Program-made: the position numbers and the translations under genes | Shown: piece after piece, positions 44,601 to 52,675 of the stretch | Position numbering within the stretch: the first letter of the stretch is position 1 | Layout of the letters: each line of letters opens with the position of its first letter | Notes under the pieces: generated by a model | Seen by the model: only the letters and a program-made list of their open reading frames with translations | Databases searched by the model: none | Told to the model about the DNA's origin: nothing | Assembly (NCBI GenBank): GCA_965112735.1 | Contig: OZ218963.1 | Location: 930,001 to 994,000, forward strand | DNA: 64,000 nt | From: Phaeosaccion multiseriatum | Taxonomy: Eukaryota; Protista; Ochrophyta, other classes | Reading direction: 5' to 3'

Positions 44601-46529
44601 AGCTTCAAATTAGATCGGGCGCGGCTCATCATGGACAAGGAAGTATCGACCATCCGAGACCAAAACGCAGCGGCTGTGGCTGGCGTCAAGGCCAGAGCGG
44701 CGTTTCTCGAAGAGCACGTCCAAACAGAGGAGAAGGCGCACAAGAATGCCCTCGCCGTCTTGAAGGAGCAGCAGGAGAAGGCGCTGTCTTCCATGTCGGC
44801 TATGTACGAGCAGAAGCTCGGCCAGCAGGCGGAGGCATATCTGCGGCTCAAGATGGCATTTGAAGACTTGGGTAAGTAAGATTAAGTAAGATTAGATAAG
44901 CGTGAGGTTGGGGGGCGGTGTGTGTATATTGTACAGAAATAGGCCCTGATTCATTCAACCGACTCATGCTTTTTGTGAATGTGTGCGCAGGCACCGCGGC
45001 CAGGCAGGACGCCGAGTACGAGCGAGAGGAGAAGGACCATATGAAAGAGACCTTTTCCGAGACGAAGCGCGTTGAGGTAGAGGGCTATATCCGTGAGCAG
45101 GCCACTCTGAGGGAGTACGTGGACTTCCTGAAGAGGCAGTACACGGCCATGCTCAAGAAGGAAGAGGCGGGCTTCGAGAAGGAACTGCAGGCCATGCGAG
45201 CGAGAGCTCACATCGCCAGTATCAATCAGGAGAAGGAGAATGCCGACTCCAAGAGCAAGACGCTTTTGCTTAGAAAGCAGCTCAAGGTGTGTGTGTGTGT
45301 GTGTGTGCTTTGCCTTGTGGGGGGGGGGTAGCACGGCAACTTATTGTAGAGGGACTTGAGGGCTCTCTGCACACTCAACAAGGAAAGAGGGGGGGGGGGG
45401 GGGTAGTGTTGAAGCCAGCTGTAACAGCTCCATGGCTTCTTTTTTGTTGTCACGTCCTGCACTACAGGTGATCCAAGAACGCATGCAGGATCAAGCAGCG
45501 CGCGAGGTTGAGGCGGATTTGGCTCTTGAGGTGTCAAAGGTGCAAGTCAAAAAGCTCGAGCTTGTGGTGCAAAACTTGGAGGGGGAGCTGCTGGCGAAGA
45601 ACCAACGGCTCAGCGAGTGGGAGCACATGGCGAGCAAGCAGAAGAACGACATGAAGGGCCTCGACAAGCTCAAGTCCGCCCTGAGCATTGAGGTGCACAC
45701 GCAGAGGGAGTACTTGCAGCAAACCGAAGCAGAGGTCGCTCGCCTTCGGGAGAAGGTCCGGAAGGATGATGCCCTGATTGACCAGGGGGCCACCGAGGCA
45801 CAGTCCTTGGAGAAAACCGTCGCGGAGAGAAATCGTCAGATACGGGTTATGAAGAAGCAAATCGTGGCCAAGGATGGGAAGCTCAGGCACCGGGAAGCAT
45901 CTTTGCTCAGTCTCTGCTCGCAGATGATGGATTTGATGGGCCGAGTCACGGACGGCTCTGGCTGGCTGGGGGCCAAGGCCCAGTGCCAGAGACTCATTGC
46001 GCCGTTCGTGGACAAGGGGTTGTTGGACGATGTGGACCCCGATGCCTCGGCCAAGGAGCAGATGAGGCAGCGAGCCAAGATGGTCGAAGGCATGAATGTC
46101 ATGAAGCGGAGTATGAGCCTGGAGCAGCAGAACCATGCGCAGCAAAACGCCATGCGCCTCAAGGAGAACCTTCAGCTCACGGAGGAGATGAACGAGCTGC
46201 GGCGGCAAAACAAGAAGCTCATCGAAGCGGTGGCGCTTCGGGGCCTCGGGCTACAGCAAAAGAAGCGGAGAAAAGGGCTCACAGACACTGCCCTGAGCGC
46301 CAGCCTTAGACCACGACGACCTGTCACGCCACTCCCAAAAAAAGAAGCGATCCGTCAAAGTCCGGGACTTTTGTCTATTACAAAGACGCTGAGAAAGGAG
46401 AGAGAGGCCGTGCTCGGTGATAGGCTCGCCGACGCAGAGGCCAAGCTGGAGGCTGCCGCTGCGGAGAAAGAACAGCTCAAAGCCGATCGGGATGCGCTCC
46501 TTTCCGAGCAAGGATGGCATCAAAGCTAA
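41663..46529 (+). CDS. CFAP57: CFAP57/WDR65-like WD40 plus coiled-coil ciliary protein
   Basis: WD repeats (ALDFHPSGYTLAVGF, LRFSSGGHLLAVA, LSGHTSCISSIHWATDDQRL, HGQAITSLRLT..FFTASEDGSIF) followed by a long coiled coil ending KENLQLTEEMNELRR, typical of CFAP57; divergent, so possibly a paralog. Confidence 0.75.
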
Positions 46530-46577: not shown

Positions 46578-47575
46578 TTAAACCGCCCCCAGGGCCGCGT
46601 ACAGAGCAAAGGCCACCTGGGATCCGAAGCCAGCCGCAAAGCGAATGGCAAACTTGGCCTGCGTTGTGCCCCCCTCGCTGAGATTGAGAGCACCCAAGTT
46701 CTCGTCTACCTCCTTGTAATTTGCGGTGGGAGGCATGACTCCCGAAGTCAGTACCTCCACCGCGCACACGTCTTCAAAGCTCACTCCCATCGGATGTCCC
46801 GTGAAACCCTTGGTGTTGATAATAGGGAGGAGAGCGAGAGCCTCGCCAAAGCACTCCCGCAATGCAAAAACCTCATTGAACGCGCAAGAGGCCGTGGGAG
46901 TGGCGTGTGTGCATGTCTCGTGGCTGAAGTATACCCCGTTCTTCGCCAGAGTCTCCCTACGGTCGTGTTAATTAAGAAGGGTAGGTAGGAATTAAGCGGA
47001 TGGGATGTAAGTAAGAGCCTTTTGCATCCCTTCCTTTTTTTTGCTTACCTGTCAAGGTCCCAATTCTTTTGGATGGTTTGCAGGAAGCGCTCAAGCTCGG
47101 TAGCAATGTGGTTCTTGTCCATGCTCGCCCCGTGGAAGGCTGAATTGGATATTTGTGTCTCCAGAAGATGGGCCTTCATGAGAGGGCCCCTCGCGAGAGG
47201 AAAGGAAGAGTTGGTCCGCGTGAAACTAGACTCCTCCGTTTCCAGGACCATTCCAATCGCCCCTGCTCCCAGAATCATCCCATTTCGTCGGCGGTCGAAG
47301 GGCAAGGCTGCCTCCTCTGCCGAGGCGCTAATCGAAGCAGCACCAAGGGCACAGAAGCCGTTGCCCACCCACGGAAGAAGCGCTTCCCCAGAAGCATCAT
47401 CTCCTGCAATGACCACCACCCTGTCGCACCTCCCGACCTGGAAACAGACCAAGCAACACGACAAGAGAGAGTGAGACAAGAGCCGACAAGCAGCACGATG
47501 GATGGATGGACTCGGCACAGGGTACGGGCCATTGAAGGGGCTGGTGGAGCAGAGTGCTAGAGGACAAACCCATCT

Positions 47576-47616
<41 letters not shown>

Positions 47617-50130
47617 GAATCATGTCTTGGGCCATGGCGACTGCTTGTGTGGATCCCGCGCACGCCGCGTTTGTCTGCATATTCGGCCCCCTGGCACCCA
47701 CAATTTGGGCGAGCTGAGCATTTCCCAGCACCAGTACTCGAAACAGGAACTTCCTGTCGAATTCGTAGTCTGATGTCATCTGTTGCTCAGGCCGCGCCTC
47801 CGCCTCTTCCGCCAGCTCTGACAGGTTCATCGTGCTCTTGGTTATCATTGCGTCCTCCAGGGACTGCAGGGCCTGAGTGTCTCGCAGGCTCAGATGCCCA
47901 TTGGCCGAGCTCTCTGCCAAGCTCTTCTTCAGCGCCAACAGGAGCTGTGACTTCTTGGCTCTGGTGATGCAGCGGCTGCGTAGGAAACGCATAACCTCTG
48001 CTATAGCCGCATCCATCCCAGGGAATGAAGATGCATACACCACGCCAGTTCCATCTCGCAAATGCTCGGGCAACTTCCAATCTGCAGCAGTGGGTCCACC
48101 CTTGACCAGACCCGCGTCTTTCATGGCCTCCAGGCCTGCCGCTACCGCCACCTGCACCGCCTTGTCCATGGTGGCTGCGATACTCGGGCTCACCCCATAC
48201 TTGCTCATGTCTAGCGTACCCAGCCGGGCAGCGAGCTGGATGGTCTCGTGCAGCTCTTTGATGGGCACCTTGTCCGGATCCCCCCCGTCCTTCCTCTTTC
48301 GCACCTGCACCACATTTTTCTCCACCATGGACGCTTTGGTTCGGTCACACAGCGCGAAGATACTGTTCTCTCCCTTCACAAGCTTTTCCAAATTGTCCTC
48401 TTCGAAGACGTGAGACTGTCCAGGTAGTCCTGCCGCCACCCCCGTGACCAGCACTACGGATGCCCTCCCAATCTTCATTGACTCTCCCCCGTCACTCGAT
48501 GAGGTACCGTCTGTTTGCGCCGTGTCCATCTCCACCTGGGAAGGCGACAGAGCGGGCGCGTAGTGCCGCTGGCCGTTCTCGTCCCCCTTATATCGCACCG
48601 CGTCCAGGGGGACCCTGGCATACCGCCTGGAGAAGTCTGCGTTAACCCCCTCTAGGTAGTACGTCCCGGGAAACAGTCTGTCGATTGGGTAAACCGGGGT
48701 GTACGGAGCAGCCGCGTGTGCGACAGCCCGGCAGTCCATAGCCGCGGCCAGCTCTACAGGGTTCAGCTTTTCCCTCTCCGCCAAGCGCCCCGCCAGGGAT
48801 ATCTTCTCGGCGAGAGCCCCGAGGCTGAATCGCGAGGAAGCCTCTGTGGAAGGCGCGCGACCAACAATCTCATACATGGTTGCCACGGAGCCGCTACCAT
48901 ACGAATACACAAAGATGCGCTTGCCCTCCAGCGACTCCTTGGCCACGTCCACGAGGCATGCGAGGCCCGCAAAGACTGAAGCCGTGTAGGTGTTACCGAT
49001 TTGCCTGCTGAGCTCGCAATTCGGTTCCACCTTCTTCTCGTAGTCTGCTACAGAAATCTTCCGCAACGCGTCATGCAAGCCCCGGTCTGTGTACGTCTCC
49101 TCCAGGGGTGTCTCCATCCAAGGCAGCAAACTCTCTAAATGGCTTGGCAAAGGCTTTCCCGCTCGCACAAGACTCCGAGCGTCATTGAAAAGGAGTCGTG
49201 CGAAGCCCTTTTGCACCAGCTTATTGTACGGCGAATGAAACACAAACCAGTCCACGTCGTTGGCAGAGAAGTGCCCAACGGCGGCCTCCTTCTTGGCAAT
49301 CAAGCGGTTGTAGCAGTCGTCCAAAGAGCGGAAGTAGCAGGCCTGGCTCAGCGCTCCGTCTACGAGAGGATACTCGCTCTCCATCTGCGGCTTGAAGAAA
49401 TCGTAGACATTGGCAGCATGCGTCGCCCTGAACTTCATACTCAGGGGCAGAGGTGCGTCCGGCCCGATGAGAATCGCCGCCGCCCCGCAGCCGCCTGCCG
49501 GCCTCGCGGGGCCCTCTGCATACACGGCAATGTCCGCAGCCACCACAATGGCGTACCTCCCATCCCAGCCGCTGCTCTCTACCCAAGCCACCGAATTCAG
49601 CAACGCAGCAGTCCCTCCGTAGCAAGCATTGACGGTGGTGACCCCTTCGATATCCGTGTTGCCTTCAAACAGGTCCATCAATACCGTCTTCGTGGACTTG
49701 GCCTTGTCCACCAGCGTCTCGGTGCCCACCTCCAACCGGCCAACGTCCTCTTTGCGTATCCCATACTTGTCCAGCAGGTTGGCCACAACCGTCAAGCAAA
49801 CGCTGTTCACGTCTTCGGTATCTCCGACAAAAGCCATGGCCTTCTGGCCCAGCCCGACCGTGTACTTGCCCGCTGAGACACCATTCTCCACCTCCAGATC
49901 ACTCTGGCACAGGAAGGGGGATTGCACAATCAAGGAGGGACGTCAACACAAGGGAAAGGGGAGGACAGGCGGGAAACAGAGAGGGAAAAGGGCAGCGATC
50001 GGTCATCGAAAACAACCAAAAGCGTTGATTTTTTGCCTCTCTCCCGATTCAAACTTACTTGCGATACATAAGTGGACGGGAAGTACACGTCTAGCGCAAG
50101 TATGCCCACATGCTCAGGGCGCGTGGCCAT
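46578..50130 (-). CDS. HMGS: HMG-CoA synthase fused to a C-terminal beta-ketoacyl synthase (KS) domain; 4 exons
   Basis: VGILALDVYFP, GKYTVGLGQ, LEVGTET, NACYGGT, FHSPY, IGNTYTAS, YSYGSG; the same exon continues into VLVTGVAAGLPG, NAACAGSTQA, ALPFDRRRNGMILG, YFSHETCT, NTKGFTGH, AAGFGSQ. Confidence 0.92.
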
Positions 50131-50272: not shown

Positions 50273-52675
50273 ATGCACTATTTTATGGCCGGCACATGCA
50301 TCGGCATCCTCGTTTCGCAGTTCCTGCCTCAGGCGCAAGGCCTTGTTCCAATGTGCATCCAGCAACTGCGGCTGCAGCAGAGGCAGCCACAGCAGCGGCG
50401 CAGCCCTCTCGTCCTGAGTGGGAGACGGCCTGTATCGCCTGGAAGAAAGCGCTTTGCTCGACCAGCAACTTCAAGTGATGATGTTGTCGCAAACGTTGAG
50501 GAAGAAGGCCCAGACGCTGAAGATGAGGAGGGGGAAAGTGCTGCCATACGGGAGGGAGAGGAGGAGGAGGAGGAGGAGAGAGAAGGGAAGCGGACGCGCA
50601 CCGTGAGGAGGCTTGCCTTGCTGCAGGGGGTAGTGGAGGATCGGAGAGATGCAGTGCGAGAGGTTGCGAAGGACATTGTGGGTACGAAAGTGCCCGAGGT
50701 GGCCAAGGAGGTGGGCGAGAGGATGCCGGACGTTGTCAAGAGCGTGGCGAAGGACGTGGGAGAGCTCGTTCCGAATATTGTAAAGAAGCAAGGAAAGAGG
50801 CGCTGGAACTATGCCTGGAACAAGATCAAGGACAGGCCGTTGGAGGCGCTGTCTATTCCGTTCACAGCGGCCTTTGTGGGGTGGATAACGAACAAGATTG
50901 CCGTGGAAATGATCTTTTTCCCTGTGGAGTGGCGAGGAATACCGATTGCCGTCGTATCTGGGCGCCCCTTTGGCATTTTGGGCTGGCAGGGGATAGTGCC
51001 TGCCAAGGCAGGAACCATGTCCGCTCGTATCGTGGACATGGTCACCACTCAGGTGAGTTGTTGGTGGGCCGGGCAGAGTCCACTGCTGCTGCTGCTGCTG
51101 ATTGTGCTTGACGCGGGTGCTCGACTAATTCTGTGTAAGACTAAGCATAGGTCTGCTTCCGCTCTCGTTTGCCGCCTTTATCGCTTGGTTCGCTGCTGTT
51201 CTGCTGCTGGTGTGATAGCTTCTCAATGTAGACGATGTCTTTCGGAGGCTGAGTCCCCGGCGAATTGCTCGCCTTCTTGCGCCTGAGATTGCTGAGATTA
51301 CCTCGTCAATAGCGGATAGCGTGGTGCCCAATGGAAACCTGCTGGTGGACGCGGCAGGCAAGGGCCTCAGTCTGGAGGCACTGGACACCATCAGGGCCCT
51401 CCGGCATCAGATGATTGTGGGTCTCACCAAGGATATGCAGAAAGGCATACAGAAATATCTGGACCTCAAGGAGCTTGTGGTGGGAGAGATGCTCGCAGAC
51501 AGGCGCCTGCTCATTGAACTGTTCCAGAGGTGCGGCAAGAAAGAGTTTAGCTTCCTGGTCAACTCGGGCTTCTACTTTGGCTTCATCTTGGGCATCATCC
51601 AAATGGGGATTTGGCTGCTGTGCGACAAGGCGTGGACACTGCCAGTGGGTGGCGCTGTGGTGGGCTATTTGACCAACTGGATTGCCCTCAAACTTATATT
51701 TGAGCCTGTCAATCCTCGGAGAATCGGCCCCTTCGTGCTGCAGGGCCTGTTTTTGAAGGTTGGTTGTTGTGGTCTTTGAGTGTTAACAGCGGGGAAACCA
51801 TCAAAAGCTATACTCCGTCTTCCGTCCTCCTGAAAAGAAATACGCCGCGCCTCCCTTGCCCACCACCACCCACACCCTCTGTTCGAGCAGAGGCAGTTTG
51901 AGGTATCTGCGGAGTTCGCGGACTTTTTCGCCACACAAATACTGCGGAGCAAAAAGATGTGGGGCACCATTTTGGCGGGATCGCACGCCCCACAGTTTTA
52001 CTCTCTGCTGGAGAAGCACACCAAGCCTTTCCTCAGGCAGGCGGCCATGACGGTCGGCACTCCGATCGATGATGCCCTAGTGGGCTCTCTGTCTCAAAAG
52101 GTGGCAGAGAGGCTTCCGGACCACATCGGCGTGCTGCACGAATACACAGACGCCACGTTGGCGCTGCAGCCCACCATTCGCAAGGCCATGGAGAAGGTAT
52201 AAAAAAGTACCCTGCTGCTACCGCCGCCACCAAGAGAGTCAATGAATGCCTCACGAACGCTTCTTTCCTCGGTTTCTTTCTTGTGTGCCCCTCCAAACAG
52301 ATGTCTCCTTCTGACTTCGAGAGCGTGCTTCACCCCATCTTTCAAGAGGACGAGTTAACGCTCGTGTTGGCGGGGGCTGTCCTTGGAGCAGCCGCCGGTT
52401 TTGTTCAAATGCTCTTCTCTACCAGGTCCAAGGACGACCTGCCAAAGTCGCCCCCAAAGTCGCCGCCCTCGGCCCCCGCTGGAGAAGAGGGAACCGCGAC
52501 AGACAGCCATGTTTCTCCTCGTCCTTCGTCCATCACAGCCGCAGCGACAGCCGTGAGGGGCCTCCTGCGCTCAGCAAGATGCTTCTTTTCCCCAATCAAA
52601 GCTGGTGCTGCGTTTCTCTCTCGCACTCAGCGCATCGCTGCCGTTGGTATTGGGTTGTTCCGCAGGCTCTCTTGA
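50273..52675 (+). CDS. DUF445 (UPF0754-like) membrane protein with signal/transit-like N-terminus
   Basis: IPFTAAFVGWITNKIAVEMIFFP, GWQGIVPAKA, NSGFYFGFILG, GAVVGYLTNWIALKLIFEP, QGLFLK|RQ, FESVLHPIFQEDELTLVLAGAVLG. Confidence 0.82.

What the first reader, a model, noticed from the sequence alone, without database searches (positions are those of the whole stretch)
46578..50130. HMG-CoA synthase fused to an intact ketosynthase: possible one-protein entry to the mevalonate or beta-branching pathway
Seen: a eukaryotic-type HMGS with its catalytic Glu (VGTET), Cys (NACYGG) and His (FHSPY) continues, within one exon, through a short Ser/Gly linker into a KS domain. The KS keeps a Cys-His-His triad (NAAC*AG, SH*ETCT, TKGFTGH*), with an unusual SHET in place of the usual HGTGT. 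There is no targeting peptide and no ACP domain. Known: PKS beta-branching cassettes pair an HMGS-like enzyme with a Cys-less KS, and archaeal thiolase/HMGS complexes channel acetoacetyl-CoA. Inference: because the Cys is retained, the KS could condense malonyl- and acetyl-CoA to acetoacetyl-CoA (NphT7-like chemistry) and channel it to HMGS, bypassing the unfavourable thiolase step. Alternatively it could act in beta-branched lipid synthesis. I recall similar architectures in other stramenopiles, so the fusion may not be new, but I know of no established function for the KS half.
Basis: partly seen in the sequence, partly recalled or inferred. Interest (0 to 1): 0.85.

Follow-up and report, generated by a model that had tools for sequence, protein, structure and literature searches.

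The report
HMG-CoA synthase fused to ketosynthase
This alga's mevalonate-pathway enzyme HMG-CoA synthase really is fused to an intact, unusual ketosynthase; diatoms, brown algae and oomycetes share the fusion and a 2009 paper listed it, but the role of the ketosynthase half, most likely making acetoacetyl-CoA from malonyl-CoA, has never been tested.

Summary
A 4-exon minus-strand gene (50130..46578) encodes a 1042-aa protein. It starts with a eukaryote-type HMG-CoA synthase (TIGR01833, 521 bits). This continues, within exon 2, through a 43-aa Ser/Gly-rich linker into a 540-aa ketosynthase that keeps Cys772, His929, Lys966 and His971.

The fusion is not new. Over 100 orthologues exist in diatoms, brown algae and oomycetes, some as complete transcripts. 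Morris et al. 2009 listed it for Phytophthora sojae and two diatoms. The Phaeodactylum entry, 16649, is the HMGS gene cited in two diatom mevalonate-pathway papers.

What is new here is the identity of the KS half. It is not a FabF orthologue or a beta-branching KS0. It belongs to an unnamed clade, here called KS* (motifs SFPG + helical insert, FDRKFLFR, H-E-T-x-T). Its nearest relatives are:
- stand-alone, ACP-less proteins of haptophytes, glaucophytes and a red alga;
- the second KS of prokaryotic KS-AT-KS*-ACP-KR-DH megasynthases.

No eukaryotic KS* examined showed an ACP; those checked are mostly the HMGS fusions. All eukaryotic KS* lack four basic residues conserved in the ACP-linked forms. 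All KS* carry Phe at the FabF Ile108 position.

The NphT7-like acetoacetyl-CoA synthase idea is therefore plausible (about 0.5) but untested. Oomycetes that carry the fusion still have annotated thiolases. No RNA data exist for this organism.

The parts
50059..50130 (-). Exon 1. ATG at 50130; 24 codons (MATRPEHVGILALDVYFPSTYVSQ) forming the N-terminus of the HMGS core. No presequence.
   Evidence: Donor GTAAGT at 50058. Corresponds to the first 21 positions of PF01154, whose match in exon 2 starts at profile position 22.
49904..50058 (-). Intron 1 (155 nt, GTAAGT...CAG).
47615..49903 (-). Exon 2 (763 codons). Holds the rest of HMGS, the linker and the N-terminal half of the KS including the catalytic Cys, in one open frame.
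48596..50130 (-). HMG-CoA synthase domain (aa 1-460, interrupted by intron 1). Glu86 at 49720-49718, Cys118 at 49624-49622, His247 at 49237-49235, GNTYTAS at 48997-48977.
   Evidence: TIGR01833 at 521 bits against a cutoff of 286; PF01154 and PF08540. Motif conservation in 42 homologues. Codon positions.
48467..48595 (-). Inter-domain linker (aa 461-503, Ser/Gly/Asp-rich, poorly conserved).
46581..48466 (-). KS* ketosynthase domain (aa 504-1042, interrupted by introns 2 and 3). SSFPG with Phe651 at 48025-48023; helical insert at about aa 654-738; FDRKFLFR at 47761-47738; Cys772 at 47662-47660; His929-Glu930 at 46922-46917; Lys966 at 46811-46809; His971 at 46796-46794; AGFGSQ at 46634-46617.
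   Evidence: 891 bits to the orthologue KS profile. Best PDB matches are FabF. AF2 model of the Scytosiphon orthologue has pLDDT 93 and TM 0.89 to FabF. Residue mapping.
47438..47614 (-). Intron 2 (177 nt, GT...AG) beginning with a (GT)n microsatellite.
   Evidence: Short-read contigs break at 47568-47622.
47049..47437 (-). Exon 3 (389 nt; KS central part, aa 788-916 plus 2 nt of codon 917).
46957..47048 (-). Intron 3 (92 nt, GTAAGC...TAG), phase 2.
   Evidence: The junction restores the frame and aligns to homologues without a gap.
46578..46956 (-). Exon 4 (KS C-terminal part with both His and Lys; stop TAA at 46580-46578).

Best explanation
The gene encodes one cytosolic, probably homodimeric, bifunctional enzyme.

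Shown:
- The N-terminal half is an intact eukaryote-type mevalonate-pathway HMG-CoA synthase. Whether it is this organism's only one could not be checked, since only this window was available.
- The C-terminal half is a catalytically intact, decarboxylating-type ketosynthase with Cys772, His929, His971, Lys966 and the GFG loop.
- That KS belongs to a distinct, unnamed clade, here called KS*.
- The fusion is ancient and shared by ochrophyte algae and oomycetes.

Inferred: the KS* half loads acetyl from acetyl-CoA onto Cys772. It then decarboxylates malonyl-CoA and condenses the two to acetoacetyl-CoA. The fused HMGS half (acetyl on Cys118, Glu86 as base) converts this to HMG-CoA. The net reaction would be 2 acetyl-CoA + malonyl-CoA -> HMG-CoA + CO2 + 2 CoA. 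This entry to the mevalonate pathway is driven by decarboxylation and avoids the unfavourable thiolase equilibrium. It works like NphT7 but uses a KAS II-type fold, not a KAS III-type fold.

The confidence of 0.5 refers to this inferred mechanism. That the gene is a real fusion with two intact active sites I hold at about 0.9.
For: - Real fused gene: gene model and motifs. DNA reads are identical across the junction.
- One mRNA in relatives: complete MMETSP transcripts P0047, P0070 and P0178 span both domains.
- Both active sites are under selection. Cys, His, Glu and Thr were counted directly and are invariant in 116 fused sequences. Lys and the second His are invariant in the reduced set of 21 fused sequences.
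- The HMGS half is of the mevalonate type: TIGR01833 at 521 bits. Phaeodactylum 16649 is listed as this fusion and is the HMGS gene cited in diatom MVA papers.
- Carrier: no eukaryotic KS* examined showed an ACP, and those checked are mostly the HMGS fusions. Arg/Lys conserved at 75-98% in ACP-linked prokaryotic KS* are absent from all eukaryotic KS*; four of these map to window-protein positions 557, 892, 936 and 984.
- Short primer: Phe651 aligns with FabF Ile108 and is aromatic in all KS*. I108F limits FabF to short chains (my own knowledge).
- The fold is KAS II-like with a clade-specific helical insert.
- Rosetta-stone logic: the fused partner consumes exactly the C4 beta-ketoacyl thioester that a KS primed with acetyl would make.
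Against: - There is no biochemical or genetic test of any member, and no paper with a function was found.
- The nearest prokaryotic relatives sit beside ACPs inside megasynthases, so the ancestral extender is malonyl-ACP.
- KAS I/II enzymes generally use malonyl-CoA poorly (my own knowledge).
- Saprolegnia and Phytophthora, which carry the fusion, also have annotated acetyl-CoA C-acetyltransferases assigned to the pathway's first step. KS* is therefore not an obvious replacement for a missing thiolase.
- Pocket and carrier arguments rest on sequence alignment to FabF at about 20% identity. I could not inspect model coordinates.
- No RNA data exist for this organism.
Confidence: 0.5

Rival explanations
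1. KS* is an active condensing enzyme for another pathway, for example a malonyl-CoA-dependent or trans-ACP-dependent lipid or polyketide step at the ER or in the cytosol. Its fusion to HMGS would then serve co-regulation or co-localisation, not substrate hand-over.
For: The closest prokaryotic relatives are embedded in fatty-acid or polyketide-like megasynthases. Stand-alone eukaryotic KS* exist without HMGS. Some have an N-terminal hydrophobic anchor or a methyltransferase-like region, so KS* can work independently of HMGS. Thiolases are present in oomycetes with the fusion.
Against: The fusion partner is specifically the enzyme that consumes a C4 beta-ketoacyl-CoA, and the fusion has been kept across ochrophytes and oomycetes. 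No ACP was detected in the gene. Aromatic residue at the FabF Ile108 position argues for a very short primer.
Confidence: 0.25
2. KS* acts mainly as a malonyl-CoA decarboxylase that delivers the acetyl donor to HMGS. This is the role of the Cys-less KS0 in PKS beta-branching cassettes. Acetoacetyl-CoA would come from a separate thiolase.
For: His-His-Lys decarboxylation machinery is intact. There is a precedent for HMGS working with a decarboxylating KS (my own knowledge). Thiolases are annotated in oomycetes.
Against: The nucleophilic Cys is invariant in 116 of 116 fused sequences, whereas decarboxylase-only KSs replace it with Ser or Gln. Free acetyl-CoA is already the normal HMGS donor, so a decarboxylase would give no obvious benefit.
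Confidence: 0.1
3. The KS* half is a non-catalytic scaffold or regulatory module, for example for oligomerisation or for tethering near HMG-CoA reductase.
For: Both parent folds are obligate dimers. Fused mevalonate-pathway enzymes and enzyme complexes have precedents (my own knowledge).
Against: Every catalytic residue and the H-E-T-x-T, TKGFTGH and GFGSQ motifs are invariant across hundreds of millions of years of divergence. A pure scaffold would not be expected to keep them.
Confidence: 0.05
4. The two halves are separate genes or transcripts in this organism, and the continuous frame is coincidental or an annotation artefact.
For: No RNA run is available for this organism. The pelagophyte Aureoumbra appears to have KS* as a separate protein.
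Against: A 763-codon open frame spans HMGS, linker and KS with no stop or splice signal needed. Four runs show identical DNA. More than 40 full-length orthologues, including complete transcripts, have the same architecture.
Confidence: 0.03

Closest known systems
Stramenopile HMGS-ketoacyl synthase fusion proteins: P. sojae Ps128154, T. pseudonana Tp260768 and P. tricornutum 16649 (Morris et al. 2009, PMC2705460); database entries from Fragilaria, Ectocarpus, Scytosiphon, Aphanomyces and Albugo
   Same: Same domain order and similar length (about 960-1200 aa). HMGS half 51-63% identical and KS half about 54-70% identical to the window protein. Same motifs. One clade in the KS tree (support 0.98).
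   Different: Nothing essential; this is an orthologue in another ochrophyte. None of these proteins has a tested function for the KS half.
NphT7 acetoacetyl-CoA synthase of Streptomyces (own knowledge: Okamura et al. 2010)
   Same: The proposed chemistry, acetyl-CoA + malonyl-CoA -> acetoacetyl-CoA + CO2 feeding HMGS in a mevalonate pathway. Acts on CoA thioesters without an ACP.
   Different: NphT7 is a KAS III/FabH-type enzyme with Cys-His-Asn and stands alone in an operon. This domain is KAS II-like with Cys-His-His plus Lys, carries a roughly 90-aa insert and is fused to HMGS. It is not a family member.
FabF / KAS II
   Same: Best sequence and structure match (E 3e-41 with the clade profile; TM 0.89 normalised to FabF). 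Cys163, His303, Lys335 and His340 equivalents, Thr305, Thr307 and the GFG loop are conserved.
   Different: About 20% identity, far below the fabF equivalog cutoff (107 against 494 bits). H-E-T-x-T replaces H-G-T-x-T. Phe replaces Ile108. A helical insert follows the SFPG loop. No ACP partner is present in cis.
Second KS (KS*) of prokaryotic (ER)-KS-AT-KS*-ACPn-KR-DH-(PPTase) megasynthases in Actinomycetota, Myxococcota, Gammaproteobacteria and Heimdall/Asgard-labelled MAGs
   Same: 38-49% identity over the whole 540-aa domain including the insert. Same FDRKFLFR, SFPG, H-E-T-x-T and GFGSQ motifs and the same triad.
   Different: Embedded next to ACPs in a multidomain synthase. Keeps four conserved Arg/Lys that eukaryotic KS* lack. 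Uncharacterised; no paper found.
PKS beta-branching cassette (HMGS-like PksG type + KS0 + donor ACP + ECH1/ECH2)
   Same: Pairs an HMGS with a KS-fold protein.
   Different: The cassette KS lacks the Cys, and the HMGS acts on ACP-bound substrates. Here the Cys is kept, the HMGS is the mevalonate type, and no ACP or ECH was detected in the gene or in the three neighbouring ORFs scanned.
Archaeal thiolase/HMGS/DUF35 complex and Enterococcus MvaE thiolase-HMGR fusion (own knowledge)
   Same: The logic of physically coupling the unfavourable first mevalonate-pathway step to the next enzyme.
   Different: Those use a true thiolase (non-decarboxylative). Parts and architecture differ.
FabY (PA5174) of Pseudomonas aeruginosa (own knowledge)
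   Same: A long KAS I/II-type enzyme that primes with acetyl-CoA. It is a precedent for a Cys-His-His KS taking over a FabH-like initiating role.
   Different: Uses malonyl-ACP. Homology to KS* could not be tested here because no FabF-independent FabY sequence was obtainable.

Membership tests
Eukaryotic HMG-CoA synthase (TIGR01833; PF01154 + PF08540) | Score above the curated equivalog cutoff over the full length | tested here: met
   521 bits against a cutoff of 286, covering profile positions 23-456 of 457 in exon 2 alone. PF01154 at 230 bits and PF08540 at 253 bits.
Eukaryotic HMG-CoA synthase (TIGR01833; PF01154 + PF08540) | Catalytic Glu, Cys and His (and the GNTYTAS Asn) | tested here: met
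   Glu86, Cys118, His247 and GNTYTAS327 are present and conserved in 42 homologues.
Eukaryotic HMG-CoA synthase (TIGR01833; PF01154 + PF08540) | Acetoacetyl-CoA + acetyl-CoA -> HMG-CoA activity | not testable with these tools
   Needs an enzyme assay or erg13 complementation.
Stramenopile HMGS-KS fusion (Morris et al. [quoted passage not shown] | HMGS followed by KS in one polypeptide, orthologous to the diatom and oomycete proteins | tested here: met
   Aligns end to end with 42 full-length fusions. Falls in the fused clade of the KS tree with support 0.98. Paper table read.
KAS I/II-type decarboxylating ketosynthase (thiolase superfamily) | KAS fold | tested here: met
   AF2 model of the 68%-identical Scytosiphon orthologue KS has pLDDT 93. 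Foldseek top hits are FabF, TM 0.85-0.89 by target. The window's own spliced protein was not folded.
KAS I/II-type decarboxylating ketosynthase (thiolase superfamily) | Cys-His-His triad plus Lys335 equivalent | tested here: met
   Cys772, His929, His971 and Lys966 align with FabF C163, H303, H340 and K335. They are invariant in all KS* groups, apart from one megasynthase sequence with Trp in place of the Cys.
FabF orthologue (TIGR03150 equivalog) | Score above the equivalog cutoff | tested here: not met
   23-43 bits for the window exons and 107 bits for a full orthologue domain, against a cutoff of 494.
FabF orthologue (TIGR03150 equivalog) | Works with an ACP | tested here: inconclusive
   No PP-binding domain in the protein. 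A trans ACP cannot be excluded.
KS* clade (unnamed; defined here) | SFPG loop + helical insert, FDRKFLFR, H-E-T-x-T, TKGFTGH, GFGSQ | tested here: met
   All motifs are present. 891 bits to the clade profile. The motifs are conserved in the fused, other-eukaryote and megasynthase groups.
NphT7-type acetoacetyl-CoA synthase | KAS III (FabH-like) fold with Cys-His-Asn | tested here: not met
   Cys-His-His and a KAS II-like fold. FabH models score only 18-21 bits on a short stretch.
NphT7-type acetoacetyl-CoA synthase | Malonyl-CoA + acetyl-CoA -> acetoacetyl-CoA activity | not testable with these tools
   Needs an in vitro assay. This bears on 'works like', not on membership.
PKS beta-branching cassette | KS0 with the active-site Cys replaced | tested here: not met
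   Cys772 is present and is invariant in 116 fused sequences.
PKS beta-branching cassette | Donor ACP and ECH1/ECH2 partners in the gene or adjacent | tested here: not met
   No PP-binding or ECH domain in the gene. The neighbouring ORFs have no such domains. The rest of the genome was not searched.

The most novel reading that the evidence does not exclude
KS* is a eukaryotic, KAS II-derived acetoacetyl-CoA synthase. On this reading, diatoms, brown algae, oomycetes and their relatives enter the mevalonate pathway through a fused, malonyl-CoA-driven two-step enzyme and not, or not only, through thiolase. The stand-alone ACP-less KS* of haptophytes, glaucophytes and some red algae would do the same job. 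That would be a second, independently evolved solution to the NphT7 problem. It would also be a lineage-specific step, absent from plants and animals, in major phytoplankton and in oomycete pathogens.
Probability: 0.45. Interest if true: 0.8.

Novelty: new member of a known kind. Interest (0 to 1): 0.6.

Why it matters
Published pathway descriptions for diatoms and oomycetes (Phaeodactylum, Saprolegnia, Phytophthora) treat this gene as a plain HMG-CoA synthase. They ignore its 540-residue second active site.

If the KS half supplies acetoacetyl-CoA from malonyl-CoA, three things follow. First, the first committed carbon flux into sterols and other cytosolic isoprenoids in these groups would be tied to acetyl-CoA carboxylase and ATP, not to the thiolase equilibrium. 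Second, this would change metabolic-engineering strategies in diatoms. Third, it would define a step absent from plant and animal hosts of oomycetes.

Independently of function, the KS half defines a large unnamed ketosynthase clade. That clade also occurs as the second KS of uncharacterised FAS-like megasynthases in bacteria and Asgard-labelled archaeal MAGs.

The hypothesis can be tested directly with existing genetics in yeast and Phaeodactylum.

Tried and rejected
- RNA evidence for this organism. The look-up of sequencing runs returned only four DNA runs of one sample. Laying them confirmed the DNA but gave no splicing or transcript information.
- 'Stand-alone' KS hits of about 560-680 aa looked like unfused relatives. 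The two I examined (P0055, P0048) turned out to be prokaryote-style gene calls on eukaryotic contigs, with HMGS immediately upstream. I did not count hits of this kind as unfused.
- The first AF2 run, with a 15-sequence alignment, failed (pLDDT 53). A 103-sequence alignment of the whole clade gave pLDDT 93. Model coordinates cannot be inspected, so pocket geometry and the orientation of Glu930 could not be checked.
- NCBIfam has no specific model for the clade.
- Fungal FAS KS and FabY were suggested as relatives by the atlas embedding hits. PDB sequence and fold searches gave only FabF-type hits. I could not obtain a FabY sequence, so that link is untested.
- The beta-branching reading is rejected: Cys is kept, the HMGS is the mevalonate type, and no ACP or ECH was detected.
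- A strict 'thiolase replaced' reading is rejected, because oomycetes with the fusion have annotated thiolases.
- Nine literature searches found no functional study. Only the 2009 table row mentions the fusion.
- Monophyly of all eukaryotic KS* is only weakly supported (0.53-0.69) and the root is uncertain. I make no claim about the direction of transfer between prokaryotes and eukaryotes.


Full report
**1. What is in the sequence**

The feature lies on the minus strand. Six-frame translation and inspection of the DNA give a four-exon gene:
- exon 1, 50130-50059, starting with ATG
- exon 2, 49903-47615
- exon 3, 47437-47049
- exon 4, 46956-46578, ending in TAA

The three introns are of the GT..AG type: GTAAGT..CAG, GT(GT)n..CAG and GTAAGC..TAG. 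The spliced CDS is 3129 nt and encodes 1042 aa with no internal stop. It aligns without gaps at the exon junctions to 42 full-length homologues.

- HMGS half: VGTET (Glu86), NACYGG (Cys118), FHSPY (His247)
- KS half: NAACAG (Cys772), SHETCT (His929), TKGFTGH (Lys966, His971)

The HMGS-to-KS transition is a 43-residue Ser/Gly/Asp-rich linker (aa 461-503). It lies inside the 763-codon exon 2. Pfam finds no ACP. Exon 1's 24 residues correspond to the first 21 positions of the HMGS_N profile, whose match in exon 2 begins at position 22, so there is no presequence. The C-terminus (...LGAV) is not PTS1-like.

Four DNA runs from one sample carry the whole region with zero differences. Their contigs break only at the (GT)n run in intron 2. 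The junction is therefore not an assembly artefact. No RNA run exists for this organism.

**2. Identity of the two halves**

The N-terminal half scores 521 bits on TIGR01833, the eukaryotic HMG-CoA synthase equivalog (cutoff 286). It scores far below cutoff on the bacterial and archaeal HMGS models.

The C-terminal half matches generic ketoacyl-synthase models only weakly. The best solved relatives are FabF/KAS II enzymes: E 1e-14 with a single sequence and 3e-41 with a clade profile.

I built an AlphaFold model of the 68%-identical Scytosiphon orthologue KS from a 103-sequence alignment. It has pLDDT 93 and pTM 0.92. It superposes on FabF with TM 0.85-0.89 normalised to FabF. About 90-100 extra residues form a helical insert directly after an SFPG loop.

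Alignment with E. coli FabF, fetched, maps the following:

| Window protein | FabF equivalent |
|---|---|
| Cys772 | C163 |
| His929 | H303 |
| Thr931 / Thr933 | T305 / T307 |
| Lys966 | K335 |
| His971 | H340 |
| Phe651 | I108 |

**3. The fusion is widespread and already listed**

A search with the KS part returned more than 100 proteins with HMGS_N + HMGS_C + ketoacyl-synt. They come from brown algae (Scytosiphon, Ectocarpus, Ascophyllum), Phaeothamnion and many diatoms, and include MMETSP ORFs marked complete. A search with the HMGS part added oomycetes: Aphanomyces, Lagenidium, Pythium. A later search added Albugo, Globisporangium and the dictyochophyte Pteridomonas.

Some apparent stand-alone hits of about 560-680 aa appeared. 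The two I examined are prokaryote-style gene calls on eukaryotic contigs with HMGS immediately upstream.

Morris et al. [quoted passage not shown] They place it among fusions that predate the diatom-oomycete split. Phatr3_J16649 is the gene two diatom papers cite as the mevalonate-pathway HMGS. PITG_12495 and SPRG_03968 play that role in oomycete work. None of these papers mentions the KS half.

I found no functional study in nine full-text searches. The window's gene is thus an orthologue of a known but uncharacterised architecture.

**4. What the KS half is related to (new here)**

I searched a profile of 15 fused KS domains against 1.8 billion representatives. It gave 620 hits below 1e-30. 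After the fusions themselves, the best hits score 430-540 bits and cover the whole domain including the insert. They lie inside proteins of 1,500-3,900 aa.

Pfam shows these large proteins to be (NMO-type ER)-KS-AT-[this KS]-ACPn-KR-DH-(PPTase) megasynthases. Their sources label them as Heimdallarchaeota or Asgard MAGs.

A genome scan found the same domain at 38-49% identity in MAGs of Actinomycetota, Myxococcota and a gammaproteobacterium. In the two loci examined (L009 Myxococcales, L010 Austwickia) the synthase lies directly downstream of an acyl-CoA dehydrogenase gene. In L009 a PPTase gene follows. I call this domain KS*.

Other eukaryotes have KS* without HMGS:
- haptophytes: Prymnesium, Haptolina, Chrysochromulina
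- glaucophytes: Cyanophora, Gloeochaete
- the red alga Rhodosorus
- the ciliate Euplotes
- the pelagophyte Aureoumbra

Some of these start with a hydrophobic N-terminal anchor. Some have a weak methyltransferase-like N-terminal region. No ACP was detected in those scanned with Pfam or carrying precomputed Pfam hits.

Cys, the first His and the H-E-T-x-T motif are conserved in all groups. So KS* is an active KS everywhere, not a chain-length-factor-like partner.

In a FastTree of 143 non-redundant domains rooted on the megasynthases' canonical KS:
- the fused proteins form one clade (support 0.98) containing both oomycetes and ochrophytes;
- a second eukaryotic clade (0.90) holds the unfused forms;
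- the prokaryotic megasynthase domains form a third group (0.85).

Monophyly of all eukaryotic KS* is weak (0.53-0.69), so I infer no donor.

**5. Function**

Shown: both active sites are intact and under strong constraint. The HMGS is of the mevalonate type.

Inferred: KS* supplies the acetoacetyl thioester. The arguments for this are:
- The fused partner consumes exactly what an acetyl-primed KS would make, and the fusion has been retained across a very deep divergence.
- No eukaryotic KS* examined showed an ACP. All lack conserved basic residues present in 75-98% of the ACP-adjacent prokaryotic KS*. Four of these map to window-protein positions 557, 892, 936 and 984. Two of them align beside FabF M269/T270 and G310, near the pantetheine channel. 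The fused clade has gained other basic residues, for example Arg at position 816 in most members, although the window protein itself has Cys there. This pattern fits a change of carrier from ACP to CoA.
- Every KS* has an aromatic residue where FabF has Ile108. From my own knowledge, I108F restricts FabF to short chains. This fits an acetyl primer, and fits KS* being the priming KS of the megasynthases, whose other KS would elongate.

The arguments against are:
- The ancestral context is ACP-dependent.
- KAS II-type enzymes usually use malonyl-CoA poorly.
- Saprolegnia and Phytophthora also have annotated acetyl-CoA C-acetyltransferases.
- The residue arguments rest on an alignment at about 20% identity, without access to model coordinates.

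I put the acetoacetyl-CoA synthase reading at about 0.5. The rivals are:
- an unrelated condensing role, with fusion for co-localisation (0.25);
- malonyl-CoA decarboxylase feeding the acetyl donor (0.1, disfavoured by the invariant Cys);
- a scaffold (0.05);
- separate transcripts (0.03).

Earlier unverified notes of this scan report separate in-cis beta-branching HMGS domains in this genome's giant PKSs. That would make a branching role for this gene unnecessary. I did not test those notes.

**6. Comparison and novelty**

The protein is a member of the stramenopile HMGS-KS fusion family. It may work like NphT7, but it is not an NphT7 family member, because its fold subtype and triad differ. 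It is FabF-like in fold but is not a FabF orthologue.

The finding is real but is a new member of a known kind. Its value lies in an open question that can be tested directly, and in the definition of the KS* clade and its unexpected relatives.

Noticed in passing
P0240, P0244, P0238, P0242: Proteins from MAGs labelled Heimdallarchaeota or Asgard. They carry a near-complete FAS-like domain set in one chain: NMO-type ER, KS, AT, KS*, ACP, KR, DH, PPTase. They are the highest-scoring non-eukaryotic relatives of the algal KS half. The one kept in the tree (P0238) is not sister to the eukaryotes. No paper found.
   Followed up: partly
L009:5165-16440 and L010:5245-16804: Two bacterial MAG loci (Myxococcales, Austwickia) with an acyl-CoA dehydrogenase-like gene directly upstream of a 2,900-3,270-aa KS-AT-KS*-ACPn-KR-DH synthase. 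In L009 a PPTase gene follows. The product is unknown.
   Followed up: partly
P0246, P0397, P0387, P0446, P0454: Stand-alone eukaryotic KS* proteins of haptophytes, the pelagophyte Aureoumbra and two unidentified eukaryotes begin with one or two hydrophobic segments. They look membrane-anchored. The Aureoumbra KS* sits inside the HMGS-fused clade, so it may be a secondary fission.
   Followed up: no
P0250, P0343, P0259: A eukaryotic KS* subgroup that includes Euplotes. It has a 300-650-aa N-terminal extension. Two of the three members (P0250, P0343) give weak SAM-methyltransferase matches there. This is another KS* fusion of unknown meaning.
   Followed up: no
window 47568-47622: A (GT)n microsatellite at the 5' end of intron 2. 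All four short-read assemblies break there.
   Followed up: yes
window 45432-46529 (+) and 50273-51780 (+): Tightly packed neighbours. A convergent 365-aa coiled-coil-like ORF with no Pfam match ends 49 bp from this gene's stop codon. A divergent gene starts 143 bp upstream of the ATG. Its later part has a weak, below-cutoff DUF445 match.
   Followed up: partly
P0121-P0126: Proteins of about 920-1010 aa with only the two HMGS families recorded, roughly twice the usual HMGS length, so they look like tandem HMGS-HMGS proteins. They come from several mosquito genomes, a Solanaceae plant and a metagenome. They may be true tandem fusions or merged gene models.
   Followed up: no
P0163, P0154 and other 450-464-aa hits: Unfused, normal-length HMGS at 54-57% identity. 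P0163 is from the chrysophyte Spumella. The fusion may therefore not be universal in ochrophytes, or these may be partial transcripts.
   Followed up: no
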